Shown: one piece after another, positions 2,876-34,819 of the stretch
Numbering within the stretch: the stretch's first letter is position 1
Layout of the letters: the number at the start of each line of letters is the position of its first letter
Virus record (IMG/VR): IMGVR_UViG_3300027759_006101
Location: 62,001-126,000 of that record
DNA: 64,000 nucleotides
Direction: 5' to 3' (one strand)
The notes under the pieces: generated by a model
Told to the model about the DNA's origin: nothing
Databases searched by the model: none
The model's input: only the letters and a program-made list of their open reading frames with translations
Position numbers and translations under genes: made by a program

Positions 2876-3877
2876 TTATACAGAGGCGAGTTTTGAAATT
2901 AATATTGGCACTGAATGATTGGCAGATCCACTGGTTCTTAAATCAACAATACTGTCAACAAGTAAAGTTATCATTTTTGAATACTGCTCAGAGCTATACA
3001 TATTTTCTTTGCTTGATTGTATGCGAATTCTTATAGGATTTTGAACTTTTACTACAAATGTAGGTTCCTTGTATTCATCATTTAAATACTTACCTAATAT
3101 GTCACGTAACTCAACAATTTCTTGAACTTCTGATAAAGGATGAAATTTTTTATTAGTTTCTGAAATAATAAGCATGAAATTCAGTTGGCTTAATAAAACA
3201 AGTAAGAATCCTTGTTCTCCCATAGAGTCAATAAGAAGATCTATTTTTGTTAAGCAATAATCTAAATTCTTATTCATCAGTTGTTCGATAAATTCGAATA
3301 TGTCGCATTCTTCATTGAAAGAGGCGTTTTGTATGTCACGTAAAAAAATCTTATCTGTGTAGGAAATTATTTTTTCTAATTCCTTAAAAAGAATATCAAT
3401 ATCATAGCAGATAATTTCTTTCTTGCTTCCAGATTGTTTTGATTTTATGCGTAAGACAGGGCATATTTCTAAAAGGTGATTTAAAGTTTCGCCGTTTATA
3501 TTTGCATTGTTTTTCAAAACATAATTATTTATATGACGTTTGAGAGCGTTAGTATCTCCCGCAAGAGGATAGCTACAATCGAAAATCAAGTTATTCTTTT
3601 TGGCTTTAGCTATAAGAGACAATCTTCCATCAAAGCTGTCGTCATCATATAAAATGACGTGTTTTATCCCTAGCTTTTCACTCTTTTCTTGAATAAGTTT
3701 TATGTCTTCATTTGTAATTTTTGTATGGACATATAAATTATCACTATCAAAAAATTTAGAATAGTTATTTATTATTTTATCTACATCATTGTCAAACAGA
3801 AGAACAAGATCAGGGAATTCTTCTCTAATCTTGTTCAGCGATATGGTAGTTGATCCGTAATAAATTCGTGGAAACAT
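2876..3877 (-). CDS. holA: DNA polymerase III delta subunit-like (clamp loader)
   Basis: ELEKIISY and DIFEFIEQLMNKN motifs, about 330 aa, directly after dnaN. Start moved to the ATG at 3877 (MFPRIYYG). Confidence 0.65.
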   Translation of the reverse strand: MFPRIYYGSTTISLNKIREEFPDLVLLFDNDVDKIINNYSKFFDSDNLYVHTKITNEDIKLIQEKSEKLGIKHVILYDDDSFDGRLSLIAKAKKNNLIFDCSYPLAGDTNALKRHINNYVLKNNANINGETLNHLLEICPVLRIKSKQSGSKKEIICYDIDILFKELEKIISYTDKIFLRDIQNASFNEECDIFEFIEQLMNKNLDYCLTKIDLLIDSMGEQGFLLVLLSQLNFMLIISETNKKFHPLSEVQEIVELRDILGKYLNDEYKEPTFVVKVQNPIRIRIQSSKENMYSSEQYSKMITLLVDSIVDLRTSGSANHSVPILISKLASV

Positions 3878-3878
3878 T

Positions 3879-4976
3879 TTAGTCCATTGGAAAAAGGATA
3901 TGCTTGAAATTTTCAGCTTCAAGCATTAACAAAATAAAATCATTATGTTTAATAAAATTGAGTCTTAACTTTTTACCATCTAACAATTCTAAAACTCTGA
4001 TTAGATGAGAAGACACATATGATACGGATAAAACTTCATAATTTTCAACTTCTATGGTATCAACGACAGCATTTTTTTCATTACTTGTTGCTGAAACTAT
4101 AAGCTTATTGATGTCTAAGGTCAAGTTTATCATATGAGAATTGGCAATACTTGATACGAACTTGACACTCTTAACTAATGCATCTTTTTCCAAATCCAGA
4201 GATAAAAAGAAACTATCACTAAAAAACTGATTGAAATTAGAAAATATTTTTTCGTAATTATTCTTCTCAAGACTACAAGAAAGTTCTCCGCCATCCCAAG
4301 TTAAATAAAGTTTATTATTAAAGAGTGAAAAAACGACTCCTGGTATTTTGTCAATATAGTAAAGAATTACATCTGAGATAGTTTTAGAAATCAAGTAAGA
4401 TGACTGCAATTCGTACTTTTTACCAAATACACTTATTCTATGTTTATCAGAAGATTGAGTGTTAATTTTACCATCTTCAAAAAACCAAAGTATAGAAGTA
4501 TAAGGATGTTCATCAAAATCAGGAGCGCATGAAAAAGAAGTCATTTTAATGCTGTGAACAAAATCTTCTACTGTAATTTCCAAAGTTTCTTCATTATTTG
4601 AAAAACTAATTACAAAATTATCTACAGGAACAGTTGCTAAAGATACTCTGGTTTTCTTGTTACCAAATATAAGCAAATTGTCTTCAGGATTGTAAATAAA
4701 TTGAACTTCTTCTGTTGGAAAGTTACTAAGTGCATTAAAAAATGAAGAGATGTCCAATCCAAAAGTACCATTTTCTGTAGATTGAACATTCTTAAGTAAA
4801 AATTTTGAACTGCAGAAATTATTCTCTGACTGGACATAAAGTTTTCCATCAATTGCGTGAAAAATAAGACTACTTGACGCAGCTTTATTCTCACGCATTG
4901 AAAGCTTTGATTTTTCAACTTTATTCAGTAATGCAAAACATACAAGATGCTGTGCCTTATTCAACTTAAATTTCAA
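3879..4976 (-). CDS. dnaN: DNA polymerase III beta sliding clamp
   Basis: About 365 aa with three-domain beta-clamp pattern and SSDKHRIS (=TDGHRLA). TTG start at 4976 overlaps the purA stop (TTGA). Confidence 0.75.
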   Translation of the reverse strand: MKFKLNKAQHLVCFALLNKVEKSKLSMRENKAASSSLIFHAIDGKLYVQSENNFCSSKFLLKNVQSTENGTFGLDISSFFNALSNFPTEEVQFIYNPEDNLLIFGNKKTRVSLATVPVDNFVISFSNNEETLEITVEDFVHSIKMTSFSCAPDFDEHPYTSILWFFEDGKINTQSSDKHRISVFGKKYELQSSYLISKTISDVILYYIDKIPGVVFSLFNNKLYLTWDGGELSCSLEKNNYEKIFSNFNQFFSDSFFLSLDLEKDALVKSVKFVSSIANSHMINLTLDINKLIVSATSNEKNAVVDTIEVENYEVLSVSYVSSHLIRVLELLDGKKLRLNFIKHNDFILLMLEAENFKHILFPMD

Positions 4977-5968
4977 TGTAGTTGTCCTTGGAATTGGATA
5001 AATATACCAGGAAGTACCATACCAACTTCTTTCCAAATATTAGAAACAAATGTATCTTCATTTGCACAAGAAATCAACATATTGTTTTCGTAATAATTCC
5101 AAGCACTGTCAACTTGTCGAAGAACATCCATTTTGTTGACAACAAGCTTAGTGACACCATTCATTTGACAAGCAGTTATAACTTCTTGGATGTTTAGCCA
5201 GTCAATTTGTCTTGGTCGTCCTGTCGTGGCTCCATACTCTTGCCCAATTTCTCTGAGCTGCTCAAATCGCTCGTCATCTTTTTGGTATCCTTTAGCTCCA
5301 ACATAGGTAGAATAACACTTGATAACCCCGATAACATCCCGTACTTGCTTATAATTGAAACCATTATTTAATACTGCTCCTACTCCGGTGTTTGAAGAAG
5401 TGACATAAGGATAATCACCAAAATCAATGTCAAGCCAATATCCTTGAGCACCTTCAGCTAAAAATTTTTTTGGGGAAGAATGAATTAGACTGTACATATC
5501 AACGAGATATGGTGCTAATTCTGGAACATCTTTAGCACGAAGACCTGTACGACCAACTTTGTCTTTATAACAAGGGCCATTTCCAGTTCGAGTTGTTCCA
5601 ATAGTTGTATCTTTGGAATCTTCGTCAATATGTTCTTGAGTAATTATATGGGCGTTTTCTGCAATCTTCAGAAGCGTTGTGTCAAATCCAAATCCTTCAA
5701 GATACGCAAGTTCGTCAAATAATTTTTGCGTATTGATAACACAACCATTACCGATGACACTAGGAATGCCATGCAGAATACCACAAGGAACCAAATGTGT
5801 AACAATTTTCTCTCCATTGAGGTAAATTGTATGACCGGCATTTCCTCCACCGTTAAAACGGACAACGTAGTCATACTCACCTGATGCAGCCATTTGATTG
5901 GCTATTTTGCCTTTTCCTTCATCGCCATACTGCATACCGATAACTACATCAACAATTGAAGTTTCCAT
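4973..5968 (-). CDS. purA: Adenylosuccinate synthetase, compact 331-aa form
   Basis: GMQYGDEGKGK, GGNAGHT, IGTTRTGNGPCYKDK, EGAQG..LDIDFGDYPYVTSS, GATTGRPR. Confidence 0.95.
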   Translation of the reverse strand: METSIVDVVIGMQYGDEGKGKIANQMAASGEYDYVVRFNGGGNAGHTIYLNGEKIVTHLVPCGILHGIPSVIGNGCVINTQKLFDELAYLEGFGFDTTLLKIAENAHIITQEHIDEDSKDTTIGTTRTGNGPCYKDKVGRTGLRAKDVPELAPYLVDMYSLIHSSPKKFLAEGAQGYWLDIDFGDYPYVTSSNTGVGAVLNNGFNYKQVRDVIGVIKCYSTYVGAKGYQKDDERFEQLREIGQEYGATTGRPRQIDWLNIQEVITACQMNGVTKLVVNKMDVLRQVDSAWNYYENNMLISCANEDTFVSNIWKEVGMVLPGIFIQFQGQLH

Positions 5969-6006
5969 ATGCGTATCTTACTACATTGCAAGATTAATGG
6001 CAAGAG

Positions 6007-6630: not shown

Positions 6631-6633
6631 AAT

Positions 6634-7344: not shown

Positions 7345-7353
7345 TACATCTTT

Positions 7354-8415
7354 TTACGCATTTTCTTTTTCAGCGTATCTTTCAATTGTTTTGAGAACAC
7401 CTGTTGTTGCTACAATGTCCTCAGAAACCGTTTGCCTTATGTCTTTTGTAATGTTATACAGTTGTTCTGCAATATCAATAAGCAACAAAGTATTTACAGA
7501 TCTTGCTATATTTTCTATATCAACATCTCTTTCAACCTTTTTGGTCTTAATAACAACATACCTAAATGCTTCAATGAAATTTTGAGATGTTTCAAGCAGC
7601 AAATTACTTAGGCTTCTACCTTCAGAGTGAGATGCTTGGATAATACGGAAGGCATTAGCATAATTTTTTTGAATTATAGCGTAAGACAAATCAATAGAAA
7701 GTTGTTTGGGTGATCTGTCAAGTAACTCTCTAATATTATCTTCTGATATATCATTCATAGAAGCTTGTTCAAGAATAGAAAGAGCAGTTCTGGCACTTCC
7801 TTCGGCATCAGAAGCAATAAGATTCAATGCTTCATCATCATAAACAAGATTTTCTTTCTCGCAAACTTCACCTAATAATTCAACTAAATTTTGTTTATTC
7901 AATTTTTTCATCAAGAATGTTTGACAACGAGTATGAATAGCACGGAGAATTTTATGTGGGTCAGTTGTGCAAAAGAAAAACTTTACATAACTTGGCGGTT
8001 CTTCAGTAAGCTTGATAAGAGATGTTTGAGCTTGAGTGGTGAGCATCTGAGCTTCATCAAGAATAAAAATCTTATACTTACCTAAAGTTGGAGCAAGACG
8101 TGACAATTGAACAACATTTTCACGTATATGATCAACACCATTGTTTACTGCACAATTAATTTCATAAACATCTGGATGCTCATCGTTCAATACCATTTCT
8201 TTCAAATCAGCTTGTTCACTATTACAAAGAAGATGAGCTGAAGCAACACGAGCAAGAGTTGTCTTACCAGTACCAGGAGGGCCTGCAAAAATATAGGCGT
8301 GAGTAGTCCTATTATTCTTGATCTGTGTCTCAAGAATTTCTGCTGATTTGCTGCCCTTTATGTCTTTAAATGTTTTAGGGCGGTATTTATTGTAATAGCT
8401 TTGACTAATCATCAT
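7354..8415 (-). CDS. dnaX: DNA polymerase III gamma/tau clamp-loader ATPase (short form)
   Basis: YNKYRPKTF, GPPGTGKTT, DVYEIN, ILDEAQML, TRCQ, EGSARTALSILEQ. Confidence 0.92.
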   Translation of the reverse strand: MMISQSYYNKYRPKTFKDIKGSKSAEILETQIKNNRTTHAYIFAGPPGTGKTTLARVASAHLLCNSEQADLKEMVLNDEHPDVYEINCAVNNGVDHIRENVVQLSRLAPTLGKYKIFILDEAQMLTTQAQTSLIKLTEEPPSYVKFFFCTTDPHKILRAIHTRCQTFLMKKLNKQNLVELLGEVCEKENLVYDDEALNLIASDAEGSARTALSILEQASMNDISEDNIRELLDRSPKQLSIDLSYAIIQKNYANAFRIIQASHSEGRSLSNLLLETSQNFIEAFRYVVIKTKKVERDVDIENIARSVNTLLLIDIAEQLYNITKDIRQTVSEDIVATTGVLKTIERYAEKENA

Positions 8416-8887: not shown

Positions 8888-9219
8888 AGCGATAACTGAG
8901 TAACTGCTACAACTTGATTGTTCTCATCACGAATTGCTGATGGTCCTGTATCAACACAGAATACATCTTCACGATCAAATGAAACAAAGTCCATTGTCAC
9001 TCTATTTACAATATAGTAAACTCCATCTTCAGGATCAGGTAGATTTACAATTTTTTCAAAGTGAGTTTCAACAATAGGAATCCCAGTCAAATAAGCAACA
9101 ACTCTTTGCTTTGTCTCTACGTGGCAAGGATTTTCACATCTTGGTAAAGTTGCGTGTCCTGAAATTGTAATATCATGCCCAATAAGATTTACAAACTTCT
9201 TAAATTCTGGATACATCAT
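8884..9219 (-). CDS. Conserved phage hypothetical protein
   Basis: FVNLIGHDITI...LPDPEDGVYYIV...IRDENNQV pattern, recognised from phage proteins. Confidence 0.55.
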   Translation of the reverse strand: MMYPEFKKFVNLIGHDITISGHATLPRCENPCHVETKQRVVAYLTGIPIVETHFEKIVNLPDPEDGVYYIVNRVTMDFVSFDREDVFCVDTGPSAIRDENNQVVAVTQLSL

Positions 9220-24459: not shown

Positions 24460-26250
24460 TTATGCTGATTTTATATCTTCTATTATCATCACCAGATTAT
24501 TATTACCAGACCAGTTATCAAGTTCAAGGGTGTAAACTACGTCAACTTTATCGCCTGGTTTGAATTCGTTACAAATATATCCACGTCTCCAAGCATTAGC
24601 AGAAACCCAAGTCTTTTCACCATTTGACAACTTAAGCTTAGCGTGTTTGCCTTGTGTAAGAGATTTAGCTTCAACAAGAGTCATATTCTTAGTGATGAAT
24701 ATTGGATTATGGTTTCCACTTCCAAAAGGAGATATTTTCGATAGATGAACATATGTTTTTATATTCAAATCACTAAAAGGCATACGAGCATCAATATCAA
24801 TAATTTTCTCACTACTTGGTTCACCTAATTTATCTTGAGCATAATTATTTAATGCTTTTCTCATTGCTGGAATATTGTCTATCGGAAGTTCAAAACCAGC
24901 AGCAAAAGCATGACCTCCACAAACAGTACTACCATCTGCTCTTTTCTTAAATAATTTCCAAGCTTCTTCTGACTTAAGAGCATCCAAGATATTAAAATCT
25001 CGAGTAGAACGACAAGAGCCTTTAGCATATCCATCTTTTTTAAATGAACAAACCAGAGTAGGCTTATTGTACATTTCTGCAATTTTGCCAGCAATAAGAC
25101 CAATCAATCCTGGGTGCCAATCTTCTTCACCCAAAATCAATATATGCTCTTTCTCTAAATCAAAATTTCTCTCAACAAAATCAATTGCCTGTTGAGTAGC
25201 TTTTTCTTGCTGTTCTTGGCGGCGAGTGTTAGCGTTGTTCATCTGCTTGGCTAGATTAGCTGCTGTAATGTCATCTTTTGAAAGCATCAAGCTCAAAGCA
25301 GTGCCAGCATCAGCAAGTCTACCTATGGCATTGATTCTTGGGCCAATTTGAAAGCCAATAGTCGTGGGAGTAACATCTTTTACTCCAGCTATACGAAGAA
25401 GTTCTTTGATTCCAGGTTTGTTACTGTTTGAAAGAATTGAACAGCCATAATTTACAATAACTCTGTTCTCATCAATCATTGGGGCAACGTCAGCAACAGT
25501 GCCTAATGCTGCAAATTCAATAAGTTCATCAACAAATTCATAAACATTAAGTTTACGATAACGGGCTAATCCGAGCATCAATTTAAAAGCAATTCCACAA
25601 CCAGCCAAATAATCAAATGGATAGCGCTCAAAACTATCTTTCTTATGTGACTTAAAATGCTCTCCTGGATAGAAAGGATCGTCTCTGTTAGGATTGACTA
25701 CTGCCATTGCTTCAGGCAACGATCCATCTTCACTAGGATGATGGTGATCAGTAATAATCAAGTCAAGATTTTTCTCTTTTGCATATGCCCCAGTTTCAAA
25801 AGCAACAATTCCACAGTCAACACTCATAAGAAGAGTTGCACCAGAAGCCAAAGCCTGATCGACAGAATGAATCTTGATATCGTATCCATCTTCCATCCTA
25901 TGAGGGACTTTGTATTCTATATTTGCTCCCATTTTTTCAAGAGCAGTAACAACAATAGCCGTAGAAGTAATTCCATCTACGTCATAATCTCCCCAGACAA
26001 ATATTTTCTCTCCAGAGTCAATTGCTTTACTTATGCGTTTTATAGCTATGTCAGCATCAGGCAAAGACATTGGGTTGTGAAGTTTTTTGATTTTCAAGTC
26101 AAGGAATTGCTCAGCTTTTTTCACTGAATCAATACCACGAGTCATCATAACTTGAGCAATTGACAATGGCACTTCAAGTTCACAGGCAAGTTCTTTGACT
26201 GAACTCATATCACAACTACGCATTTTCCAAACTGTTTCTATTTTATCCAT
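24460..26250 (-). CDS. recJ: Single-stranded DNA exonuclease RecJ
   Basis: GDYDVDGITS, RMEDGY, VDCG, ITDHH (DHH), GTVADV, GPRINAIGR, GSCRS, GGHAFAAG, PFGSGNHNP. Confidence 0.95.
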   Translation of the reverse strand: MDKIETVWKMRSCDMSSVKELACELEVPLSIAQVMMTRGIDSVKKAEQFLDLKIKKLHNPMSLPDADIAIKRISKAIDSGEKIFVWGDYDVDGITSTAIVVTALEKMGANIEYKVPHRMEDGYDIKIHSVDQALASGATLLMSVDCGIVAFETGAYAKEKNLDLIITDHHHPSEDGSLPEAMAVVNPNRDDPFYPGEHFKSHKKDSFERYPFDYLAGCGIAFKLMLGLARYRKLNVYEFVDELIEFAALGTVADVAPMIDENRVIVNYGCSILSNSNKPGIKELLRIAGVKDVTPTTIGFQIGPRINAIGRLADAGTALSLMLSKDDITAANLAKQMNNANTRRQEQQEKATQQAIDFVERNFDLEKEHILILGEEDWHPGLIGLIAGKIAEMYNKPTLVCSFKKDGYAKGSCRSTRDFNILDALKSEEAWKLFKKRADGSTVCGGHAFAAGFELPIDNIPAMRKALNNYAQDKLGEPSSEKIIDIDARMPFSDLNIKTYVHLSKISPFGSGNHNPIFITKNMTLVEAKSLTQGKHAKLKLSNGEKTWVSANAWRRGYICNEFKPGDKVDVVYTLELDNWSGNNNLVMIIEDIKSA

Positions 26251-27007
26251 TGTTTTTTCTTATGATTATCTTATCTCTGCCCAATTCAATAGTTTCTAAA
26301 ATTACTTCATCTAATTTTGATAATGAGTTGTTTCTAGCAAGATCGTCTGGGTCCATACCATCACACAAATAAATACTAATTACATTTATTTGAAGATTTT
26401 TTATTGTTTCAATTGCTTTCTCTGTAGCTATTCTTCCAGGGTAATCACCATCCATCAATAAACAGATATTATCGCAATACCTTGAGGCTAGTGCTACTTG
26501 ACATTCATGTAGAGATGTGCCACATATAGCAGCAACATTTTCTATGCCTTTATCATACAATGAATAGACATCAAAATATCCTTCGGTTAATATGATGTAA
26601 TTTTTTTCTCTAGCTTTGTCTTTTGCTACATCAAGAAAAAATAAATTTCTATTTTTTTGATAAGGTTCATTAATCCATTTTCCTCTTTTCCACTTATCAA
26701 TTCTATCTTGGCATTTAGCAGGTTCATTGCCAAAGCTATTCCACATTGCTTCGATAGTTATCTCTTCTAATTCTGGAATTTGTCTACCAGCTAAAGCAAT
26801 AATTTCTCCGTATACATTTTTTATAGGAACAATTAATCTACCTTTTAGATAAGGAAAACTATATCTAGAGAACGGAGGACAAAAAGCTACCAATTTGTTT
26901 TCAGTAATCTTTTCTGAAAGATGTCTAGTTTTAAAATATTCTTGAACAACTTTATTTTCATCATAGTTGCGCAAAAATTGATTGTAGTTCAATTCAAAGC
27001 TGTTCAT
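26243..27007 (-). CDS. dnaG: DnaG primase catalytic core (TOPRIM) without its zinc-binding domain
   Basis: RLIVPI...IIALAGR, TEGYFDV, AAICGTSL, LMDGDYPGRIA, GMDPDD. Start moved to the ATG at 27007. Confidence 0.85.
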   Translation of the reverse strand: MNSFELNYNQFLRNYDENKVVQEYFKTRHLSEKITENKLVAFCPPFSRYSFPYLKGRLIVPIKNVYGEIIALAGRQIPELEEITIEAMWNSFGNEPAKCQDRIDKWKRGKWINEPYQKNRNLFFLDVAKDKAREKNYIILTEGYFDVYSLYDKGIENVAAICGTSLHECQVALASRYCDNICLLMDGDYPGRIATEKAIETIKNLQINVISIYLCDGMDPDDLARNNSLSKLDEVILETIELGRDKIIIRKNNG

Positions 27008-27085
27008 CAAACAAATTGTATCATTAAAGGTAAGAATAATCATCTACAAAGAAATAAAGAATATCATTTTATTCAAGGTTTAAGA

Positions 27086-28456
27086 ATGGATAAATTTCAG
27101 AAACTTTCACAATTATCAAAAGAAATACAAATTTTAGAGACTGCAGGTAAAATTAAGGCAGCAGAAGTCCTTCATAAAAAATTCATCAAGGAATCACAAT
27201 ATATGATGCCACAAATGATGCCTATGATGATGATGCCTCAAATGATGCCTCAAATGATGCCTCAAATGATGCCTCAAATGATGATGGCAAGACCAACAGC
27301 TACTGTCGCTCCAGCTGCAGTAGCTAGACCAGTTGTCAATCAAACTCCAACTTCGGCACCTACACCAGTAGTTGCTCCAACTCCAGTACAGCAAGGGCAG
27401 ACAGGGCAAACTGGGCAAGTTACGCCTCCTGCTCAATCTACGACACCTCCTACTACACAGCCACCTGTAGTAAACCCACCTGTGACAACTCCTCCTCCTA
27501 TGCCTATTGATAAAGTTAAGAGACAATACGGTGATGGTCAATCAAAAAATGAAGAGTTGCAATATCTTGATAAAGAGAAAAGAAGACTAGAAGAATTAGG
27601 TTACAATGATCCCAAAAGCCCCTTTTATCAACAGTATCTGACTATTATTGGTATGATAAATAGAAATAAAGGCGGCTCAATAATCAAAAAGAGTGAAAAT
27701 ATGAACAAATTACAAAAGTTAGCACAATTAAATAAAGATATTGAATTATTAGAAAACGCTGGAAAGTTCAAAGCAGCTGAAATTTTACAAAAGAAATTAC
27801 TTAAAGAAGCACAAACTTTTGGTTATGGTGACACAAGTAGTAATTTTGATGCTCCTGGATATTCTGGACCAAGACAAGATATGCCTGACACATATGCAAA
27901 CGTAGAACTTAATGAACAAATAAGACAGAATTTAAGAAATAATAAACAACAAAATCCTTCAACTCAAACATCAAATCCTACTGAGTCTGATACAGCTAAT
28001 GTAAATGCTTTCAATGAAGGTATGTATGGTCAAATAAACCCTTTATCTTCAACTTCACAGCTTGATTACAAGACATTAATCAACCAAGCAAAAAATTACA
28101 TTGCGAGTGGTGATATGAATACAGCTGCTCAAATTAAGCAGCAAGCATTAAATTCTAGTATGACTCCTCAACAAAAAGCAGCGTTTCAACAGCAATACAA
28201 CACTATAGTTCAAAATTATTCCAATACAGCTAATAACCCTGAAGCATTTCAGTCGCAAGAAAATGCTCAGAATGCAATCGCTAAAGCTGCTCAATCACTG
28301 GGCATAAACACAAATGATCCACAAGCAATAAGAAAGAATGAATTAAAACTGAGAAGCAAATTACAGCAAATGGGATTACTAAAAGATAAAAATGTCCAAA
28401 GTTTACTAAGACAAATTTCTTTAAGAGGTTACTATATACAGAACCCTAATAAGTAA
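27086..28456 (+). CDS. Low-complexity orphan protein made of two tagged modules
   Basis: MDKFQKLSQLSKEIQILETAGKIKAAE (27086) is repeated as MNKLQKLAQLNKDIELLENAGKFKAAE (27701). M/P/Q/T-rich. Start moved to the ATG at 27086. Confidence 0.65.
   Translation: MDKFQKLSQLSKEIQILETAGKIKAAEVLHKKFIKESQYMMPQMMPMMMMPQMMPQMMPQMMPQMMMARPTATVAPAAVARPVVNQTPTSAPTPVVAPTPVQQGQTGQTGQVTPPAQSTTPPTTQPPVVNPPVTTPPPMPIDKVKRQYGDGQSKNEELQYLDKEKRRLEELGYNDPKSPFYQQYLTIIGMINRNKGGSIIKKSENMNKLQKLAQLNKDIELLENAGKFKAAEILQKKLLKEAQTFGYGDTSSNFDAPGYSGPRQDMPDTYANVELNEQIRQNLRNNKQQNPSTQTSNPTESDTANVNAFNEGMYGQINPLSSTSQLDYKTLINQAKNYIASGDMNTAAQIKQQALNSSMTPQQKAAFQQQYNTIVQNYSNTANNPEAFQSQENAQNAIAKAAQSLGINTNDPQAIRKNELKLRSKLQQMGLLKDKNVQSLLRQISLRGYYIQNPNK
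27203..27286 (+). repeat. 12-bp tandem repeat ATGATGCCTCAA encoding (MMPQ)n
   Basis: Four near-perfect consecutive units plus degenerate flanking units. Confidence 0.9.
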
Positions 28457-28485: not shown

Positions 28486-28487
28486 AT

Positions 28488-29705
28488 TTAGTCTAACATT
28501 TCTTTTGCTGCAATATCAAAAGTAATTCCACCATCATCGTCATCGTCATCGATATCAATGTCGTCAGAAGATGGGCCTTTACTAATTGCTTCAACAAGAT
28601 CGGTAAGTGGTTTTCCAACTACTTTCAAGCGACCACAGATAAATTCAAATGCTGTAGTAGAATTATCATTACGAGTGCGCTTTTCAGGAGCTGGTTGAGT
28701 CATCAAAAGTTTACAGAATTCATATGCATCTTTAGATTCAATTACTTCTCCAGTGTCAATGTTCGTGTAAATAAACTTCTTACGAACCTCTTTGACGTAT
28801 TCAAATCCCTTAGCCTTAGCCTTATAGAGAAATTCATCAACAGGATTAGTAGTTTCATCATCAGTGAACATAATCTTGAATTCACCAGTGACACCAGGCT
28901 GACCATATCGAGTCTTCATAACAAGAACTTTGCTCTTGCCACCAATTACGACATCTTTACCTTCTGCATCTTTCTTGGTAACTTGTCCAGCAGCCCCATT
29001 AATCTTATTGATCCACAGACGCATATGAGTAAAGTAGTTCATAGCATTACCGCCAGAAGCAGTTTTTGCCATTGTCCCAGGCATTACTCCAGCACCCATA
29101 TAGAGCTGATTGATAAGTACAACAATAGTGCCCGATGCAGCAGTTTTAGCAGTTAAATCTTTGGTTAATCTTTTTACAAATCGTGCATGTAGTCCAATAG
29201 TCTGAACTTGCTCCATAGATTTTACTAATTCGTCATTTGGTATCATTGCTGAAATAGAGTCAACAATAATGACAGAATAGTCTCCTGTCTCAACCATAAA
29301 TTTGAGCAATTCACCATATTTTTCTGCGGATCCAACATTTTCAACAAGCAAAAGTTGAGCAGTGTTGACACCACAAGATAAAGCACGTAAAGGATAATAT
29401 GAATTCTCAACATTGAAGAAAGCACACTTCTTACCCAATTTTTGAGCTTCAGCAATTAACTTGTAACCAAGCCAAGTTTTGCCAGATTGTGATTCACCAC
29501 AAAATTCAATCAATGTACCAGCAGGAATTCCCATACCTGCACCAAGGATTGAATCAACTTCAAAAACACCTGTAGGAATAAATTCAATATTCTCTACATC
29601 ACCAGACTTAACACACTTCTCGTCAATTCCAAGTGCTTTAAGTTTTTGCTTTAGTAAACGCTCTTGATCTTTATCAATAGCTTCGTTTAGTTCTTTTCTA
29701 GCCAT
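28488..29705 (-). CDS. recA: RecA/UvsX recombinase
   Basis: IPTG...DSILG, GESQSGKT, IIVDSISAM, VVLINQ, SGGNAMNYF. Confidence 0.93.
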   Translation of the reverse strand: MARKELNEAIDKDQERLLKQKLKALGIDEKCVKSGDVENIEFIPTGVFEVDSILGAGMGIPAGTLIEFCGESQSGKTWLGYKLIAEAQKLGKKCAFFNVENSYYPLRALSCGVNTAQLLLVENVGSAEKYGELLKFMVETGDYSVIIVDSISAMIPNDELVKSMEQVQTIGLHARFVKRLTKDLTAKTAASGTIVVLINQLYMGAGVMPGTMAKTASGGNAMNYFTHMRLWINKINGAAGQVTKKDAEGKDVVIGGKSKVLVMKTRYGQPGVTGEFKIMFTDDETTNPVDEFLYKAKAKGFEYVKEVRKKFIYTNIDTGEVIESKDAYEFCKLLMTQPAPEKRTRNDNSTTAFEFICGRLKVVGKPLTDLVEAISKGPSSDDIDIDDDDDDGGITFDIAAKEMLD

Positions 29706-29716
29706 GATTTATCCTC

Positions 29717-29745
29717 AAAAAGGGATGGAATAAATCCATCCCTTT
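29717..29745. terminator. Hairpin between the ssb-like gene and recA, abutting the recA RBS
   Basis: AAAAGGGATGGA-N5-TCCATCCCTTTT. On the minus strand it is followed immediately by GAGGATAAATC-ATG. Confidence 0.7.
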
Positions 29746-29751
29746 TATCAA

Positions 29752-30735
29752 TTACTTAGTGCCCATCCAACCTAATGACAATTCATCATCAGAATCATCA
29801 TCATTTTCATCCTCATCAAAGACAGGTTTTGACACAGGCTTTTTCTTAGGCTCAGGAGCAGGAACTGACACTTCATCTTGATCTTCATCCACAGCAACAG
29901 GTGGTTTTACAGAGTAAGAAGATTTTACTGGAGCTTCAGGAACTTCAATATTTTCACCACGAGGAGGTGTAAATTTGAAAATCCTATCTAATGGATAACC
30001 ATAAGCAAAGAAATCTTCCCACTTTGGCATATTAGAATCATTCTTCCTATCTGCCTCGTAACCAAGACGCTCACGCTCTAAATCAGCAACTGAAGGTTCG
30101 CCTGCTTTACGTAAAAGCTCAACCATCTCATCAGTGATATAAGTTGGTTTACCCTCAAAATATAGAGTGTAATCAACAGAAAGAGGAGGCTCTTTGCCAG
30201 TAGCAGCAGCAGTAATCTTTACACAAGGAGAATTTCGGGTGCCATAATGACGGCCATCACCATCTTCATTTTCCTGATCTTCGTAATTCTGAATGGTTTG
30301 TTCAGCAACACGATTGAAGATGCTCTTACCTTTCTTGAGAATCTTAACTTCCCAGGTACCATCTTCTTGCTTTTCAAGAACATTCTGAGCATATTGAACA
30401 TTTCCAATATAACCCATTTTCTTCCAAGGACATTGAGAAACGTCATCGTTGCCAATTCGATTGAATGACTTGTTAAGATGAGCATCTGGAAATGGAATCT
30501 TCATAGTCTTTCCACGAAGTGAAGGATCATTGCCTGGGTTTGGAACATACACTTTATCAGTATATTCGATGAACATATAAGGGTCGCCAATGAGCTTTAG
30601 ACGGCGAACAACCTTAGGTGAATCTTTGACTGAAAGATTTACAAGAATATCTTGCAAACGAGGAAATGAGTTGCGAGGTGCAGAGCTGGCTGCTTGTTGT
30701 GCAACCATCTGAGATGCTGAAACACGTTTAATCAT
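29752..30735 (-). CDS. Phage single-stranded DNA-binding protein (gp32-like)
   Basis: CPW...QYAQNV...VKIL..GKSIF core and acidic C-terminal tail (DEDENDDDSDDE...W), next to recA. GGAG RBS supports the start at 30735. Confidence 0.55.
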   Translation of the reverse strand: MIKRVSASQMVAQQAASSAPRNSFPRLQDILVNLSVKDSPKVVRRLKLIGDPYMFIEYTDKVYVPNPGNDPSLRGKTMKIPFPDAHLNKSFNRIGNDDVSQCPWKKMGYIGNVQYAQNVLEKQEDGTWEVKILKKGKSIFNRVAEQTIQNYEDQENEDGDGRHYGTRNSPCVKITAAATGKEPPLSVDYTLYFEGKPTYITDEMVELLRKAGEPSVADLERERLGYEADRKNDSNMPKWEDFFAYGYPLDRIFKFTPPRGENIEVPEAPVKSSYSVKPPVAVDEDQDEVSVPAPEPKKKPVSKPVFDEDENDDDSDDELSLGWMGTK

Positions 30736-30819
30736 AATTTTCTCCAATTGGGCTCTTCCGTCCCACACTTATAAGTTTACTTTGAATTTTTGGCTTTAGC
30801 AATAAGATTTTCAAAAAAA

Positions 30820-31596
30820 TTAAATTCTTGAATTTCTAGTCCGAACTGTAGCCTGATTCCTATTTATAGGAGTTTTATCTTTCGAAAAAAGATTGGACAT
30901 ACCCTCTTGATTGAAGGAATGATTGATTCTTGAAAGCGCTTGATGCTCTCGTAAAATTCTGTCCATTTGACTTGCTGCAAATTCAATATTTTTTAGATAA
31001 TGCTCCAAATATGTTAGCAGCCTTTTGGAGTTTGTCATCGGAATGACAAATGGGTGAACAGTGAAAGCAGCATTTGCTTCTTTATCTTTCGCTGTTCCTG
31101 ATGATAATCTGATAGCCATTTCTCTAAGATTTTTATGTGCTTGAGAAATCATTTCATAATGTGCATAAACTACAGAAATTATTTCTGTCAATCTGTTTCT
31201 ATATTGAACTTGTAATGCATATGAAGCAGAAAATGATTCAAAATCATAGTCATCTTTAGTAGGAATTGCAATATCCCATTTTCTAACTTCATTTCTAATC
31301 TCAAGTTCATCATAAATTGGCAAAAGACTAATAGCATCTTGCCAATTTTGCACTTCTTTAGCAAAACTTTCTTCGCTAATACCTTTGAGACGACTAACTA
31401 AATCTTTGGAAAAGTTAGGATCTTGCCAGGAAATACTTTCTGGCATAGGAGCCCAATCTAAATTAGCTACAAGGATAGAATTTTCTTCATCATATCCCTC
31501 TTCGCCCTCAGACTTAATGACAAAATCTTCATTGGCGTAGTCTGCATAATCATCAAAATCTAAATCTTCCATAGCATCCTCAATCGAATAATTCAT
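30820..31596 (-). CDS. Hypothetical helical protein, possible UvsY-like recombination mediator
   Basis: Long amphipathic helices with the SGTAKDKEANA motif. Position next to the ssb-like gene and recA. Confidence 0.35.
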   Translation of the reverse strand: MNYSIEDAMEDLDFDDYADYANEDFVIKSEGEEGYDEENSILVANLDWAPMPESISWQDPNFSKDLVSRLKGISEESFAKEVQNWQDAISLLPIYDELEIRNEVRKWDIAIPTKDDYDFESFSASYALQVQYRNRLTEIISVVYAHYEMISQAHKNLREMAIRLSSGTAKDKEANAAFTVHPFVIPMTNSKRLLTYLEHYLKNIEFAASQMDRILREHQALSRINHSFNQEGMSNLFSKDKTPINRNQATVRTRNSRI

Positions 31597-34500
31597 CGCT
31601 CAAAAGGTGATTGGAAACTCTTGCAGTGTTTAATTGTTTCTTTTCACCACTTACAATACTATCATAGGACATTGAGTTTTTTTCAGCAAGTTTTCTTAAT
31701 CTTAAGGCTTGTTTTTCCTCACGAGATCTATCTAAAACTAACTGGTCCCAATGTAAAAGAAAATCTTCTACATACTCAAATTCATCAGCATCAGGCAAAC
31801 AGCACAAAGCATTAGCTTCAGCTAGTGCAGCAACAGTGCCTCTATTAGGTCTTGCTCTGTAACAAAAATCTTTAATGTCTTCATAAGGCTGGCTTTCAAC
31901 AATTTCAACTGATCTTGTTCCAACTCCTTTGATAGTCGATAATGGAAGTAAAATTTCACCTTTTTTATTGACACTTGTCTCAACACCAGACTCATTAATG
32001 TTTGGGTTTTTGATAGGTATTCTTTCCATATCGCATTCTCTTCTTAAGACTGCAACTTTATCTTCATCAAGCCTATCAATTTGTATACAAGCAGCAAGCC
32101 ACTCAGAAGGGTAATAATTACGCAAATAAGCTGTGTAGTATGATAAAAGTGCATATGAGCAAGCGTGTGACCTATTGAAAGCATATCCTCCGAATTTTGC
32201 CATCAATGCAAGAACTTCATCAATCACTTCTTTAGATATTCCGTTTTCAGCACTTTTAGAAGCAAATAAACTACAAACCTCATCAAAATCCTTGCCAGAT
32301 TTTTTAGAAATAGCTTTGCGTAATTTGTCTACTTGCTGCCAAGTAAAGCCTGCCATATCACGAGCCAAAAACATTGCTTGCTCCTGATACACCATAATTC
32401 CGTATGTCACTGAAAGATGTTTTTCAATAATGGGATGAGCATATTGAATTGTTTCAGGATGCCTTTTACCTTCAGCATACTGTGGAATATAATCCATAGG
32501 ACCTGGACGATAAAGTGCTGCAACAGCAATTAAATCTTCAACACTAGAGGCATTGACATCTCGTAAAGCTTGTTGCATTCCTTTAGAAGCAAATTGAAAA
32601 ACTGAAGCTGTTTTACCTTTCGCATAAATATTCTTGAAAATCTTCTGGTCATCAAGATTTATTTTTTTGAAATCGATTTCTTTATTGTGAAGTCGTTTGA
32701 TATGTTGCAAACACAAAGAAACTTGCTGGAATGCTGCTAAGCCCAAAAAGTCATATTTTACAAGGCCTACACGTTCTACATTCTTCATATCGTATGCAGA
32801 ACACAAGTTGCCTTTTGAGTTTTCGATAGGTGCGTGATAAGAAATTGGTTCTGAAGATACAAGCACTCCAGAAGCGTGGACACCAAAGTTAGAAATAGTT
32901 CCAACTAAATGAATTGCATTATCAATTTCAGGTTTCCATTTCCTGTAGTACATCTTGAAATCTTCATTTTCAATAAGAGTATCTTCAATAGTAGAGCCTG
33001 GTTTTTTAGAAATCAATGCAGAGATATTTAGTGCCTGGTTATGAAAATCATCAGGATATTTTGCCTGAAATCTTTCGGATGATTTTAGACAACCAACAAC
33101 AGCGGCTTTTGCACCATATCTTCCCCAAGTACCAATTTGCGCAACGTGGTCATCACCAAAACGGTCTTTGGTCCAATCAATAACTTCTGAACGCCTAGAA
33201 TCGTCAATATCTGTATCAACGTCAGGAAGAGCAGCAACTTTAGAGACAATTAAACCAGACTCAGGCTTTTCATCAGTTATTCCTAATATATGAGCGGTCC
33301 AAAGTTGTGATTCATTCGTTTGGGTTTTTATGCCTAATTTAGCTAAACCATAAATATACGAAGACAAGCCTTGATTCTCTAATACCCACAATTCTTTTTC
33401 GATATCAGGTTCATACTTTTGATATTGCGGAAAATGCTCAAGCCACTTTTGAGTGTACTTCTTGAGTTTTTTAGTGTATGGAATTTGTTCTTGATCACCA
33501 TATTCAGAAAGAAATTGTGAATGTGGGAACTCAGAAATATCAATCTTGTATTGAGTGCCTCTTCCAGGATTCAAAAAACGTTCAAACATCAAGTTCCAGC
33601 GAACAGGATCTACATTGCAAACTTCAAGACAAAAGTTCACTAAAGAACCTACCCCAGAACCACGAATTCCAAAGTGAATATTCTTTTGTTTTAAGAATTC
33701 AACCATTTCTCTTTGAATTAAAAAATAGTCTGTAACACCCATATACCAAATTTGTTTAAGTTCATAATTCAAACGTTCAAGATATGTTCTATTAAATAGA
33801 CCGGCAGCTTTCAAACCATTCAAGCACAAGTAAGCAAGATACGCCTCATTATCTTTATGATAAGGAAGCTTTGAATTCTTAAATGCAGCAAATTCTGGAT
33901 TAGTGACTGGTACTTTTGCCGATGGTAATAAGTGAGGTACATCAAGCTTGAAAAAATCTTCCACCATCTCTGATATAAGTACAGAATTCTTCAAAGCTTC
34001 AGGAACTTGAGCACCAAATATTTTATGCATTTCATCATAAGACTTCAGATAAAATTGATGGCTGCCGTAAGCTTCTTTCTTACCGCCACCTTTTCTGTCA
34101 GTCCTAGAGTCACGTTGATCCCTCATTTGAATTAAGACATCGTGAATAGTCCAGTCTAATTTATCTAAATAATGAACATCATTTGAAGCGACCAATGGCA
34201 CATCAAACTTTTTAGCAACATTAAGTAAATGCTGCATATTGTGTTTTTGTTCTTCTATTCCATGATATTGAAGTTCAACAAAATATCTATTGCCAAAAAC
34301 ATTCTTGAAACGTGACGCAATTTTATTTGACTGTTCTAAATCTTCCTTGATTATAGATTGATTAAGTTCAGATGCTAAGCAGCCAGATAAAGCAATCACA
34401 CCTTCACTATGCTTTTCGATGCATCCCCAGTCTACACGAGGAGAGTAATGAAAAGCATCAGGATCATTACCAATAGCAGATAACGCTAATAAATTTTTAT

Positions 34501-34819
34501 ATCCTGTTTCATTTTGAGCAAGAAGGGTTAGGTGATTGAGTTTCTTTCGACGACCATCTTCTGTCTTGCTTTTATCAAAACGATCTTCACAAGTGTAAAC
34601 CTCAATTCCAACAATTGGTTTGATAGTTTCGTAGTCACATTTAACACGGCAAGCTTCAACAAATTCTACTGCTCCACCAAGTTTTCCGTGGTCAGTAATT
34701 GCAGTAGCTCTAAAGCCCATTTCTCGTGCTTTAAGGGCGTATTTAGCAGGAGTAGGAAGTGCGTCTTGTATTGAAAAATGTGTGTGTGCGTGAAGATGCA
34801 CAAAATCTTTATTACTCAT
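31580..34819 (-). CDS. dnaE: DNA polymerase III alpha subunit
   Basis: PHP domain (HLHAHTHFS, TDHG, SNDVHY), FERFLNP, LPDVDTD, HASGV, KYDFLGL, YQEQ, YAFNRSHA, HhH IKGVG. Start moved to MSNKDF (34819). Confidence 0.95.
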   Translation of the reverse strand: MSNKDFVHLHAHTHFSIQDALPTPAKYALKAREMGFRATAITDHGKLGGAVEFVEACRVKCDYETIKPIVGIEVYTCEDRFDKSKTEDGRRKKLNHLTLLAQNETGYKNLLALSAIGNDPDAFHYSPRVDWGCIEKHSEGVIALSGCLASELNQSIIKEDLEQSNKIASRFKNVFGNRYFVELQYHGIEEQKHNMQHLLNVAKKFDVPLVASNDVHYLDKLDWTIHDVLIQMRDQRDSRTDRKGGGKKEAYGSHQFYLKSYDEMHKIFGAQVPEALKNSVLISEMVEDFFKLDVPHLLPSAKVPVTNPEFAAFKNSKLPYHKDNEAYLAYLCLNGLKAAGLFNRTYLERLNYELKQIWYMGVTDYFLIQREMVEFLKQKNIHFGIRGSGVGSLVNFCLEVCNVDPVRWNLMFERFLNPGRGTQYKIDISEFPHSQFLSEYGDQEQIPYTKKLKKYTQKWLEHFPQYQKYEPDIEKELWVLENQGLSSYIYGLAKLGIKTQTNESQLWTAHILGITDEKPESGLIVSKVAALPDVDTDIDDSRRSEVIDWTKDRFGDDHVAQIGTWGRYGAKAAVVGCLKSSERFQAKYPDDFHNQALNISALISKKPGSTIEDTLIENEDFKMYYRKWKPEIDNAIHLVGTISNFGVHASGVLVSSEPISYHAPIENSKGNLCSAYDMKNVERVGLVKYDFLGLAAFQQVSLCLQHIKRLHNKEIDFKKINLDDQKIFKNIYAKGKTASVFQFASKGMQQALRDVNASSVEDLIAVAALYRPGPMDYIPQYAEGKRHPETIQYAHPIIEKHLSVTYGIMVYQEQAMFLARDMAGFTWQQVDKLRKAISKKSGKDFDEVCSLFASKSAENGISKEVIDEVLALMAKFGGYAFNRSHACSYALLSYYTAYLRNYYPSEWLAACIQIDRLDEDKVAVLRRECDMERIPIKNPNINESGVETSVNKKGEILLPLSTIKGVGTRSVEIVESQPYEDIKDFCYRARPNRGTVAALAEANALCCLPDADEFEYVEDFLLHWDQLVLDRSREEKQALRLRKLAEKNSMSYDSIVSGEKKQLNTARVSNHLLSDELFD

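What the first reader, a model, noticed from the sequence alone, without database searches (positions are those of the whole stretch)
2876..34819. Streamlined phage-encoded Pol III holoenzyme with matching deletions
Seen: dnaE, dnaN, dnaX and holA are all present, with no holB, dnaQ or chi/psi in the window. DnaX is only 353 aa, without the tau C-terminal domains and without the usual CxxC zinc module after Walker A. DnaE ends shortly after the HhH motif, with no apparent OB-fold or tau-binding tail. Its PHP domain keeps HxH, TDHG and DxH ligands. Known: tau binds the DnaE C-terminus, and intact PHP domains proofread in Mycobacterium and Thermus DnaE. Inference: both halves of the tau-alpha interface were lost together, giving an untethered replisome with intrinsic proofreading and possibly a DnaX/HolA-only loader.
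Basis: partly seen in the sequence, partly recalled or inferred. Interest (0 to 1): 0.6.

Follow-up and report, generated by a model that had tools for sequence, protein, structure and literature searches.

The report
Phage Pol III replicase without tau
A 358-kb tailed phage carries its own pared-down bacterial-type DNA replicase (polymerase, sliding clamp, a short clamp-loader ATPase and a very divergent delta subunit), a reduced variant of machinery already known in other phages rather than a new kind of system.

Summary
The window lies in a 358,269-bp tailed-phage record. It encodes a DnaE-type polymerase, a beta clamp, a 353-aa DnaX (domains I-III only, no zinc module) and a very divergent delta (HolA) that only NCBIfam below its cut-off and a fold search recognise.

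DnaE has all nine PHP metal ligands. It ends after the HhH domain with one long helix and a disordered tail, so there is no OB fold or tau-binding domain. No delta-prime, tau domain V, chi, psi, PolA or PolB was found in the record. Delta-prime is also missing from a second, ~88%-complete relative, and positive controls show the search would have found it.

Two corrections:
- A DEDDh (DnaQ-superfamily, KapD/PolC-exo-like) exonuclease sits about 4 kb beyond the window. It is not conserved in all relatives.
- "Matching deletions" is not shown. Short DnaX and OB-less DnaE each occur independently in other phages.

New here: DnaE ends in a clade-invariant tail, LLSD(D/E)LFD-COOH, after a variable linker. 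This is most likely the clamp-binding motif, so the protein stops right after it.

Closest precedent is Bacillus phage Flasso (PolA, beta, gamma-delta'-delta). Verdict: a real, reduced variant of a known kind, of moderate interest.

The parts
31580..34819 (-). DnaE-type Pol III alpha. The longest ORF starts at TTG 34846 (1088 aa, P0001, the numbering used in this report). The likely ATG start at 34819 gives 1079 aa. Architecture: PHP, palm/thumb/fingers, (HhH)2, long helix, disordered tail.
   Evidence: Pfam and NCBIfam; PDB phmmer Taq alpha 2.5e-138; AF2 pLDDT 81.5 with Foldseek top hits Taq, E. coli and Mtb alpha; the only DNA polymerase found in the record.
31583..31606 (-). Terminal peptide LLSDELFD-COOH of DnaE (residues 1081-1088), a putative clamp-binding motif.
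   Evidence: Near-invariant in about 25 homologues after a variable linker (a few conservative substitutions such as IFD, ILND, LISD); replaced by DLFPDDLL-COOH in a distant subclade. Disordered in the model. It sits where DnaE carries its CBM, after the (HhH)2 motif (PMC3919608).
33233..33559 (-). Clade-specific helical insertion of about 108 aa (residues 430-538) between FLNPGR and the catalytic PDVD motif of the palm.
   Evidence: Gap against Taq alpha. Present in all clade members and absent from P0140-P0142. Five helices with block-mean pLDDT mostly 83-94, dipping to about 70 at both edges.
7354..8415 (-). DnaX, gamma-length (353 aa). Walker A GPPGTGKT, Walker B DEAQ, TRC arginine finger, sensor-2 GSART. 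No zinc module and no domains IV-V.
   Evidence: Relatives measure 346-375 aa.
3879..4976 (-). Beta sliding clamp (DnaN-like, 365 aa, pI 5.6).
2876..3877 (-). Divergent delta (HolA-like) clamp-loader subunit, 333 aa.
2302..2868 (-). Sigma-70-family (region 4, ECF-like) factor directly downstream of dnaN-holA. It ends in ...ILGEDFLFD-COOH, which resembles the DnaE tail.
29752..30768 (-). Probable gp32-like SSB with an acidic tail ending ...SLGWMGTK.
   Evidence: Atlas feature search 0.91 to gp32 clusters, a lead only. Tail conserved in relatives.
36507..38078 (-). DnaB-type replicative helicase with an acidic tail ending ...ELDVSDWMLS.
   Evidence: Pfam DnaB_C 5e-24; tail conservation.
35884..36522 (-). 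DnaG zinc-ribbon protein. The primase appears split: the Toprim part is at 26243-27043.
26243..27043 (-). DnaG catalytic (DNAG_N + Toprim) protein.
38075..38875 (-). IstB/DnaC-like AAA+ protein, probably a helicase loader.

Best explanation
A jumbo tailed phage encodes a self-contained, reduced bacterial-type replicase.

Shown:
- DnaE is the only DNA polymerase in the record.
- Its PHP metal site and polymerase catalytic aspartates are intact.
- It ends in a helix plus a disordered tail instead of OB + CTD.
- DnaX is a complete AAA+ motor (domains I-III) without the tau extension.
- A beta clamp and a structurally delta-like subunit are encoded in a conserved cassette.
- No delta-prime, tau C-terminus, chi or psi is detectable.

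Inferred:
1. The invariant terminal LLSD(D/E)LFD peptide is the clamp-binding motif. The polymerase stops exactly after the motif that lies between HhH and OB in cellular DnaE, and it hangs on the phage clamp by this tail, as T4 gp43 does on gp45.
2. The loader is DnaX plus delta. The most economical form is four DnaX and one delta, the 4+1 layout of T4 gp44/62 and archaeal RFC, with a fourth DnaX taking the place of delta-prime.
3. Proofreading comes mainly from the PHP exonuclease, as in Thermus and Mycobacterium DnaE1. The nearby DEDDh exonuclease is an accessory.
4. Without tau, polymerase-helicase coupling is either absent or made by other short-peptide contacts.
For: Gene identities.
Only polymerase.
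Phage identity: portal 1.4e-28 and large terminase 9.6e-29 just upstream of the window; IMG/VR record with CheckV completeness 89%.
Absences in the 358-kb record: PF13177 and TIGR00678 hit only DnaX; PF06144, PF12170, PF01336, chi and psi gave nothing; phmmer, hmmsearch and hhalign with DnaX find only RuvB, PhoH, DnaC-like and Clp-like ATPases.
Positive controls for delta-prime.
Same single hit in relatives G001 (316 kb, 88% complete) and G008 (261 kb, 73% complete).
Cassette mpep-dnaX-sigma-purA-dnaN-holA-sigma in 51 loci.
DnaE tail conservation.
PHP and catalytic residues invariant.
Exonuclease absent from G001.
Clamp pI 5.6, typical of loader-dependent ring clamps by the criterion of PMC3201878.
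Against: - The record is about 89% complete and linear, so a delta-prime could lie in the missing part or be too divergent to see. Delta itself escaped Pfam and PHROGs.
- A host delta-prime could complete a 3:1:1 loader.
- The tail matches the QL[S/D]LF consensus only at positions 3-5.
- The complex prediction for clamp dimer + tail gave no verdict and is not evidence either way.
- An active-looking DEDDh exonuclease (phrog_192 'DNA polymerase exonuclease subunit') is encoded 4 kb away in this genome and in G003.
- PHP activity is inferred from ligands only.
Confidence: 0.6

Rival explanations
1. Hybrid loader: phage DnaX and delta assemble with the host's delta-prime (and perhaps other host subunits) into a canonical 3:1:1 complex. 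The phage set is then incomplete rather than streamlined.
For: No phage delta-prime was found. This option was already raised for gamma-only phages in PMC3201878. Another phage, Flasso, keeps its own delta-prime, which suggests the position matters.
Against: Phage DnaX is only about 30-35% identical to cellular and other-phage DnaX, and delta is barely recognisable. Collar contacts with a host subunit would have to survive that divergence. The host is unknown. T4 and archaeal loaders show that a 4+1 layout works.
Confidence: 0.2
2. A phage-encoded fifth subunit exists but is unrecognisable. It would be a gp62-like or very divergent delta-prime analogue among the conserved unknown ORFs (e.g. 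34861-35679, 40472-41296) or in the unassembled ~11%.
For: Delta itself was invisible to Pfam and PHROGs. The hhalign control could not even link delta to DnaX. Several conserved ORFs of unknown function sit in the replication cluster.
Against: None of these ORFs has a P-loop or SRC-like signature or any clamp-loader hit. Two were pointed elsewhere: gp32-like, and a weak UvsY-like lead. ORF 23434-24408 is Cys/His-rich and looks like a zinc-finger protein.
Confidence: 0.15
3. Proofreading is supplied in trans by the DEDDh exonuclease, acting as an epsilon analogue. The PHP site would then be structural or have another role.
For: RNase_T domain 5.7e-14; best families are KapD and the PolC exonuclease; phrog_192 'DNA polymerase exonuclease subunit' 1.9e-12. 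DEDDh motifs are present in the sequence. An intact PHP site does not exclude epsilon binding (PMC3919608), and mycobacteria use both (PMC11348249).
Against: At 186 aa it is only the catalytic domain. It has no C-terminal segment like the one that ties epsilon to alpha, and no clamp-type tail. It was not found in relative G001 at 88% completeness, whereas the nine PHP ligands are invariant.
Confidence: 0.25

Closest known systems
Bacillus phage Flasso (MZ357961): beta clamp plus a gamma(368 aa)-delta'(261 aa)-delta(299 aa) operon
   Same: A phage-encoded bacterial-type clamp with a short, tau-less DnaX and a delta subunit (annotation). DnaX is mutually recognisable at 1e-38.
   Different: Flasso keeps a delta-prime and uses a PolA polymerase. 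The present phage has DnaE, no delta-prime, and a delta with no tblastn match in 50,697 phage records.
E. coli / Thermus Pol III holoenzyme (alpha, beta, tau/gamma3-delta-delta', epsilon)
   Same: Homologous alpha core, beta, DnaX domains I-III and delta fold. All nine PHP ligands are kept, as in Taq alpha.
   Different: No OB or CTD in alpha. No tau domains IV-V, zinc module, delta-prime, chi or psi. No epsilon with an alpha-binding tail. An extra 108-aa palm insertion.
T4 replicase (gp43, gp45, gp44/62) and archaeal RFC
   Same: Proposed 4+1 loader layout, a polymerase held on the clamp by an acidic-hydrophobic extreme C-terminal peptide behind a variable linker (PMC2988020), and a gp32-like SSB and UvsX-like recombinase next to the polymerase gene.
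   Different: The proteins belong to the bacterial lineage (C-family polymerase, three-domain beta, DnaX, delta), not PolB/PCNA-like/RFC-like. The stoichiometry is untested.
Jumbo phages with Pol III alpha (group 3.2: Bacillus phage G, Clostridium phage c-st; PMC7824862) and phage C-family polymerases surveyed in PMC3201878
   Same: A PHP-bearing DnaE as the phage replicase. Lack of similarity to cellular alpha after the fingers/HhH region is already described as the rule for phage enzymes.
   Different: Those surveys report no phage genome combining alpha, beta, gamma and delta. In the 2011 survey the only phage with both a C-family polymerase and a beta homologue (Bacillus phage 0305phi8-36) had no clamp-loader subunit.
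Cellular DnaE3/DnaE2 variants lacking OB and CTD (PMC3919608)
   Same: The PHP-Pol3-(HhH)2 core-only architecture exists in cells: about 4% of DnaE3, Thermotogae, and some DnaE2.
   Different: Those enzymes mostly have disrupted PHP sites and weak clamp motifs, and they work beside another replicase. Here the PHP site is intact and DnaE is the sole polymerase.

Membership tests
DnaE-type C-family polymerase (Pol III alpha) | PHP domain, Pol3 core with the catalytic Asp triad, (HhH)2 | tested here: met
   Pfam and TIGR00594 above cut-off; D542, D544 and D699 invariant; fold match to the alpha chains of 2hpi, 2hnh and 7pu7.
DnaE-type C-family polymerase (Pol III alpha) | OB domain C-terminal to the clamp motif (present in at least 97% of family members, PMC3919608) | tested here: not met
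   No PF01336 in the protein, the record or clade homologues. The model is helical then disordered after residue 1018.
DnaE1 subgroup | C-terminal tau-binding domain (CTD) | tested here: not met
   The protein ends 71 residues after the HHH_6 match. NF004226 scores 771 bits, below its cut-off of 1002, and the alignment stops at profile position 884 of 1146.
DnaE1 subgroup | Beta-clamp binding motif QL[S/D]LF after (HhH)2 | tested here: inconclusive
   The conserved terminal SD(D/E)LF keeps positions 3-5 only. The binding prediction gave no verdict.
PHP-proofreading DnaE (Thermus / Mycobacterium type) | All nine metal ligands of the PHP site | tested here: met
   Alignment to Taq alpha; invariant in the clade. 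Activity itself cannot be tested with these tools.
DnaX (gamma/tau) | AAA+ domains I-III with Walker A, Walker B, the SRC arginine finger and sensor 2 | tested here: met
   TIGR02397 265 bits, above its cut-off of 250; motifs read in the sequence; alignment to E. coli gamma.
DnaX (gamma/tau) | Four-Cys zinc module after Walker A | tested here: not met
   7-residue deletion with one Cys left.
DnaX (gamma/tau) | Tau domains IV-V (DnaB and alpha binding) | tested here: not met
   The protein ends with domain III. A sigma gene starts 10 nt downstream. No PF12170 in the record, though that model is narrow: it rings in only 4 of 14 control genomes.
HolA (delta) | Three-domain delta fold | tested here: met
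   Foldseek top hits are 3zh9 delta at 2e-9 and E. coli delta chains 8giy_A and 1jqj_D (ranks 2 and 4), with a gamma chain at rank 3. Profile A1's only PDB hit is 3zh9_B. Two of the 90 listed homologues carry PF21694, which a BFVD entry describes as a 'DNA polymerase III delta subunit-like C-terminal domain'.
HolA (delta) | Family HMM score above the curated cut-off | tested here: not met
   TIGR01128 scores 43 bits against a cut-off of 80; no PF06144.
Bacterial gamma complex (DnaX3-delta-delta') | A delta-prime subunit | tested here: not met
   with positive controls. A host-supplied or unassembled copy is not excluded.
4+1 clamp loaders (T4 gp44/62, archaeal RFC) | Four identical ATPase subunits plus one unique subunit | not testable with these tools
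Epsilon (DnaQ) proofreading subunit | DEDDh domain plus a C-terminal segment binding alpha and a clamp motif | tested here: not met
   The 186-aa protein is the catalytic domain only. Its best families are KapD and PolC-exo, and the epsilon models score 4e-4 and 2e-3. It is absent from G001.

The most novel reading that the evidence does not exclude
The phage's beta-type clamp is a hub read by short C-terminal peptides. The polymerase and the sigma-70-family factor encoded immediately after dnaN-holA carry look-alike acidic-hydrophobic ends (...LLSDELFD and ...ILGEDFLFD). The loaded clamp would then both hold a tau-less polymerase and activate replication-coupled (late) transcription. This is the T4 gp45-gp55/gp33 logic rebuilt with bacterial-lineage parts. 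In parallel, the DnaB helicase and the gp32-like SSB share a second conserved tail (acidic run + ...W-M...), which could tether them to one partner in a T7-like way and replace tau.
Probability: 0.3. Interest if true: 0.75.

Novelty: new variant of a known kind. Interest (0 to 1): 0.5.

Why it matters
If the reading is right, this clade offers the smallest natural bacterial-lineage replicase: one polymerase with built-in proofreading, a clamp, and a two-protein loader. Three questions become directly testable with four small proteins:
- Can a DnaX/delta loader work without delta-prime?
- What do the OB and tau-binding domains of alpha really add?
- How are leading- and lagging-strand synthesis coordinated without tau?

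The clade is abundant in metagenomes, with thousands of near-identical DnaX clusters, so many natural variants are available. The shared tails also suggest that clamp-coupled transcription, known from T4 and recently from Mu (PMC12867686), may extend to phage-encoded beta clamps and sigma-70-type factors.

Tried and rejected
- Complex prediction of the clamp dimer with DnaE residues 1040-1088: first attempt unanswered, second returned 'no answer' (score 0.19, mark 0.34). It is no evidence either way.
- hhalign of 179 ORFs (180-700 aa) against a clade DnaX profile found only generic P-loop ATPases. Its control failed: delta against DnaX gave probability 0.2-0.3. It therefore cannot exclude a very divergent fifth subunit (timed out, 57, 58).
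- ORF 213891-214973, a weak DnaX hit, is RuvB. ORFs 290952-292319 and 286277-287632 are PhoH/PIN and Clp-like AAA proteins.
- The ORF overlapping the 3' end of dnaE (30820-31596) is not a split-off OB/CTD. It has no PHROG, Pfam or NCBIfam hit, and the atlas gives only a weak UvsY-like lead.
- Terminase_6C, Terminase_6N and Gp23 Pfam models found nothing. PHROG models later found portal and large terminase.
- The third word search (DnaX) returned only near relatives and gave no broad profile.
- tblastn of delta against GenBank phages found nothing.
- Co-variation of sigma and DnaE tails in distant subclades is suggestive but too loose to count.
- No reads tools, no alternative genetic code and no big representative search were used. 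Table 11 gives dense ORFs, and stop codons among ORFs of 200 aa or more are TAA 121, TGA 33, TAG 33.

Full report
**Where the window lies.** The window is bases 62,001-126,000 of a 358,269-bp IMG/VR virus record, linear, with a CheckV completeness of 89%. It is a tailed phage. A portal protein (phrog_16240, 1.4e-28) and a large terminase (phrog_2, 9.6e-29) lie just upstream of the window, and tail-fibre and tail proteins lie elsewhere. GC content is 29-36%. Table 11 gives densely packed ORFs with normal stop usage, so no other code was considered.

**Checking the observation.** All four genes are real and on the minus strand.
It matches PHP, DNA_pol3_alpha, finger and HHH_6 and TIGR00594 above its cut-off. 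It aligns with Thermus alpha residues 5-972 at 2.5e-138.
- *DnaX.* 7354-8415, 353 aa. It passes the dnaX_nterm equivalog cut-off over the whole profile and has Walker A, Walker B (DEAQ), a TRC arginine finger and sensor 2. Against E. coli gamma there is a 7-residue deletion where the zinc module sits, and only the first of the four cysteines remains. A sigma gene starts 10 nt after its stop, so no extension by frameshift is plausible.
- *DnaN.* 3879-4976. Its TTG start overlaps the purA stop as TTGA. It matches the full dnaN profile at 7e-18, below the cut-off, and phrog_947. Its pI is 5.6.
- *holA.* 2876-3877, 333 aa. This was the weakest call, with no Pfam or PHROG hit at all. It is nevertheless delta. 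TIGR01128 gives 3e-11. Two of the 90 listed homologues carry PF21694, which a BFVD entry describes as a 'DNA polymerase III delta subunit-like C-terminal domain'. A 23-sequence profile has B. subtilis delta as its only PDB hit. An AlphaFold2 model (pLDDT 82) has B. subtilis delta 3zh9 on top (2e-9), with E. coli delta chains at ranks 2 and 4 and a gamma chain at rank 3.

**The C-terminus of DnaE.** Family alignments stop near profile position 884 of 1146. PF01336 is absent from the protein, from the whole record and from all clade homologues; the nearest OB-bearing homologue is only 33% identical over the searched C-terminal region. In a full-length model (pLDDT 81.5, pTM 0.74) there is no beta strand after about residue 966. 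Residues 1018-1065 are helical, including one 31-residue helix, and residues 1066-1088 are disordered. The best fold matches by target coverage are the E. coli alpha 1-917 constructs (TMt 0.73).

An alignment of 43 homologues shows what the end is. After a conserved helix comes a linker of variable length and sequence, then a near-invariant terminal peptide, LLSD(D/E)LFD-COOH. A subclade at about 53% identity has DLFPDDLL-COOH instead. In DnaE the clamp-binding motif follows the (HhH)2 motif and precedes the OB domain, and its last two positions (LF) are the best conserved (PMC3919608). The phage enzyme therefore seems to stop right after that motif. The result is a C-terminal clamp tail like that of T4 gp43 (PMC2988020).

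**PHP and proofreading.** The nine ligands (H19, H21, D28, H53, E82, H105, C156, D223, H225 in P0001 numbering) align with those of Thermus alpha. They are invariant wherever the N-terminus is present. PHP-based proofreading is established in bacteria that keep this site (PMC11348249).

The record also encodes a 186-aa DEDDh exonuclease at 129,879-130,439, about 4 kb past the window. It matches RNase_T at 5.7e-14. Its best families are KapD and the PolC exonuclease, while the epsilon models reach only 4e-4 and 2e-3. It also hits phrog_192 'DNA polymerase exonuclease subunit'. It is the catalytic domain only. It is present in relative G003 and was not found in the 88%-complete G001. I rate it an accessory rather than an epsilon equivalent, but it weakens the claim that there is no dnaQ.

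**Missing subunits.**
- In the 358-kb record the delta-prime/gamma Pfam model and the holB model hit only DnaX.
- Tau domain V, chi and psi models find nothing. Those models are narrow, however.
- phmmer, a clade HMM and hhalign with DnaX recover only RuvB, PhoH, DnaC-like and Clp-like ATPases.
- The positive controls matter here. The same DnaX query finds E. coli delta-prime at 2.5e-12 and the delta-prime of Bacillus phage Flasso at 8e-13. Flasso delta-prime finds only DnaX in this genome.
- Relatives G001 (316 kb, 88% complete) and G008 (261 kb, 73% complete) also have a single clamp-loader ATPase.
- A delta-prime of ordinary divergence is therefore absent. A very divergent one, a host one, or one in unassembled DNA is not excluded, and the hhalign control could not even link delta to DnaX.
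- No PolA or PolB is present, so DnaE is the replicase.

**Clade and conservation.** Fifty-one IMG/VR loci keep the cassette metallopeptidase-dnaX-sigma-(ORF)-purA-dnaN-holA-sigma. DnaX measures 346-366 aa, delta about 330-350 aa and DnaN 365-391 aa. Delta and DnaN diverge fastest, down to 36-40% identity. G000 and G001 are syntenic across the whole replication region. DnaE is 1076-1118 aa throughout. The reduced state is therefore old and fixed, not an assembly artefact.

**How it probably works.** The polymerase rides the phage clamp by its terminal peptide. The clamp is loaded by DnaX plus delta. The most economical loader has four DnaX and one delta, the layout of T4 gp44/62 and archaeal RFC, an idea already floated for gamma-only phages (PMC3201878). 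From my own knowledge of the field, free E. coli DnaX is a tetramer in which delta-prime replaces one protomer, which makes a DnaX4-delta state plausible. I rate 4+1 at about 0.45, host delta-prime at about 0.2 and a hidden fifth subunit at about 0.15. Proofreading is most likely intrinsic (about 0.55). The canonical tau bridge cannot exist.

**Why 'matching deletions' is not shown.**
- Short DnaX occurs in phages that use PolA and have no DnaE: Flasso at 368 aa and the Nodularia phages.
- Phage DnaEs generally lose similarity after the fingers domain, whatever else the genome encodes (PMC3201878).
- Some cellular DnaE2 and DnaE3 lack OB and CTD (PMC3919608).
- No intermediate was found in this clade.

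Both halves are missing, but nothing indicates a coupled loss.

**Comparison with what is known.** Jumbo phages with Pol III alpha are described (PMC7824862). Phage beta and gamma homologues are described (PMC3201878, PMC4889955). Flasso carries annotated beta, gamma, delta-prime and delta, and BFVD holds phage proteins named Pol III delta. What differs here is the combination in one genome of alpha, beta, gamma and delta without delta-prime, a DnaE cut exactly after its clamp motif with an intact PHP site, and a clade-specific palm insertion. I call this a new variant of a known kind.

**Noticed beside the finding.**
- Only two of the 761 ORFs of at least 60 aa end in LFD: DnaE, and the sigma factor encoded directly after dnaN-holA (expected 0.2; post hoc P about 0.03). 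The sigma tail ILG(E/K/D)DFL(F/L/Y)D lies beyond region 4.2. It is kept, sometimes modified, across relatives of 52-90% identity, and it drifts further in the two distant subclades.
- DnaB and the gp32-like SSB are the only two ORFs with an acidic run followed by ...W-M... at the C-terminus. The motif is kept in most of 10-12 relatives while the neighbouring linkers vary, and in the most distant pair both tails change to ...S-W-S.

Both patterns recall the peptide-tail logic of T4 (clamp-polymerase-sigma) and T7 (helicase and SSB tails). They may explain how this replisome does without tau. Neither was tested.

**Limits.** The genomes are incomplete, the host is unknown, and all functions are inferred from sequence and predicted structure. 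Residue numbers refer to the 1088-aa ORF from TTG; the true start is probably nine codons later.

Noticed in passing
window 2302-2868 (-): The sigma-70-family factor (region 4, ECF-like) immediately downstream of dnaN-holA in all 51 related loci ends in ILG(E/K/D)DFL(F/L/Y)D-COOH, beyond region 4.2. This closely resembles the DnaE terminal peptide. Only these two of 761 ORFs end in LFD (expected 0.2). It may be a clamp-binding tail that couples transcription to replication, as in T4 gp55/gp33 and Mu MuC.
   Followed up: partly
window 36507-38078 (-) and 29752-30768 (-): The DnaB helicase and the gp32-like SSB both end in an acidic run followed by a conserved (L/I)-x-x-W-M motif (ELDVSDWMLS and ELSLGWMGTK). 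They are the only two such ORFs in the genome. The motif is kept in most of 10-12 relatives, and both change to S-W-S in the most distant pair (L076/L077). This suggests a shared docking partner, T7-like.
   Followed up: partly
window 33233-33559 (-), DnaE residues 430-538: Clade-specific helical insertion of about 108 aa between FLNPGR and the catalytic PDVD motif. Block-mean pLDDT is mostly 83-94, dipping to about 70 at both edges. It is absent from Taq and E. coli alpha and from the nearest outgroup homologues. One relative (P0138, 1573 aa) additionally carries intein/LAGLIDADG domains.
   Followed up: partly
G000:C1:129879-130439 (-), about 4 kb beyond the window end (locus L003:3879-4439): A 186-aa DEDDh exonuclease (RNase_T; KapD/PolC-exo-like; phrog_192). 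It is present in relative G003 (where the match contains one in-frame TAA) and was not found in G001.
   Followed up: yes
window 35884-36522 (-) and 26243-27043 (-): The DnaG primase appears split into a zinc-ribbon protein (212 aa) next to dnaB and a separate DNAG_N+Toprim protein (266 aa) about 9 kb away. Both are conserved in G001.
   Followed up: no
window 28488-31596 (-): A T4-style recombination module sits directly downstream of dnaE: a possible UvsY-like ORF (weak lead), a gp32-like SSB and a UvsX/RecA-like recombinase with an acidic tail. The replisome is thus a mosaic of bacterial-type and T4-type parts.
   Followed up: partly
window 4973-5968 (-): An adenylosuccinate synthetase (purA-like, Pfam 1.6e-84, only 331 aa) is embedded between dnaX and dnaN. 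It is the best-conserved gene of the cassette, 82-97% identical in full-length copies where delta is 36-48%.
   Followed up: no
window 23434-24408 (-): A conserved 324-aa Cys/His-rich ORF (CPIC, HHHH, CPFC, CxxC clusters) between recJ and the RNR genes, 74% identical in G001. No family hit; it looks like a multi-zinc-finger protein.
   Followed up: no
window 26921-28456 (+): A 511-aa low-complexity ORF with PQMM and proline/threonine repeats on the opposite strand, overlapping the start of the Toprim gene. It has no family hit and no homologue in G001, so it may not be a real gene.
   Followed up: no
window 12637-18511 (-): Two very large ORFs (951 and 1008 aa) with no Pfam or PHROG hit. They are absent from the syntenic position in G001, so this is a variable island inside the replication region.
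   Followed up: no
window 41293-44381 (-): An SbcCD/Rad50-Mre11-like set: a metallophosphoesterase (333 aa) between an AAA_23/SMC_N head (375 aa) upstream and a short SMC C-terminal-like ORF (241 aa) downstream. The ATPase seems split into two genes flanking the nuclease gene.
   Followed up: no
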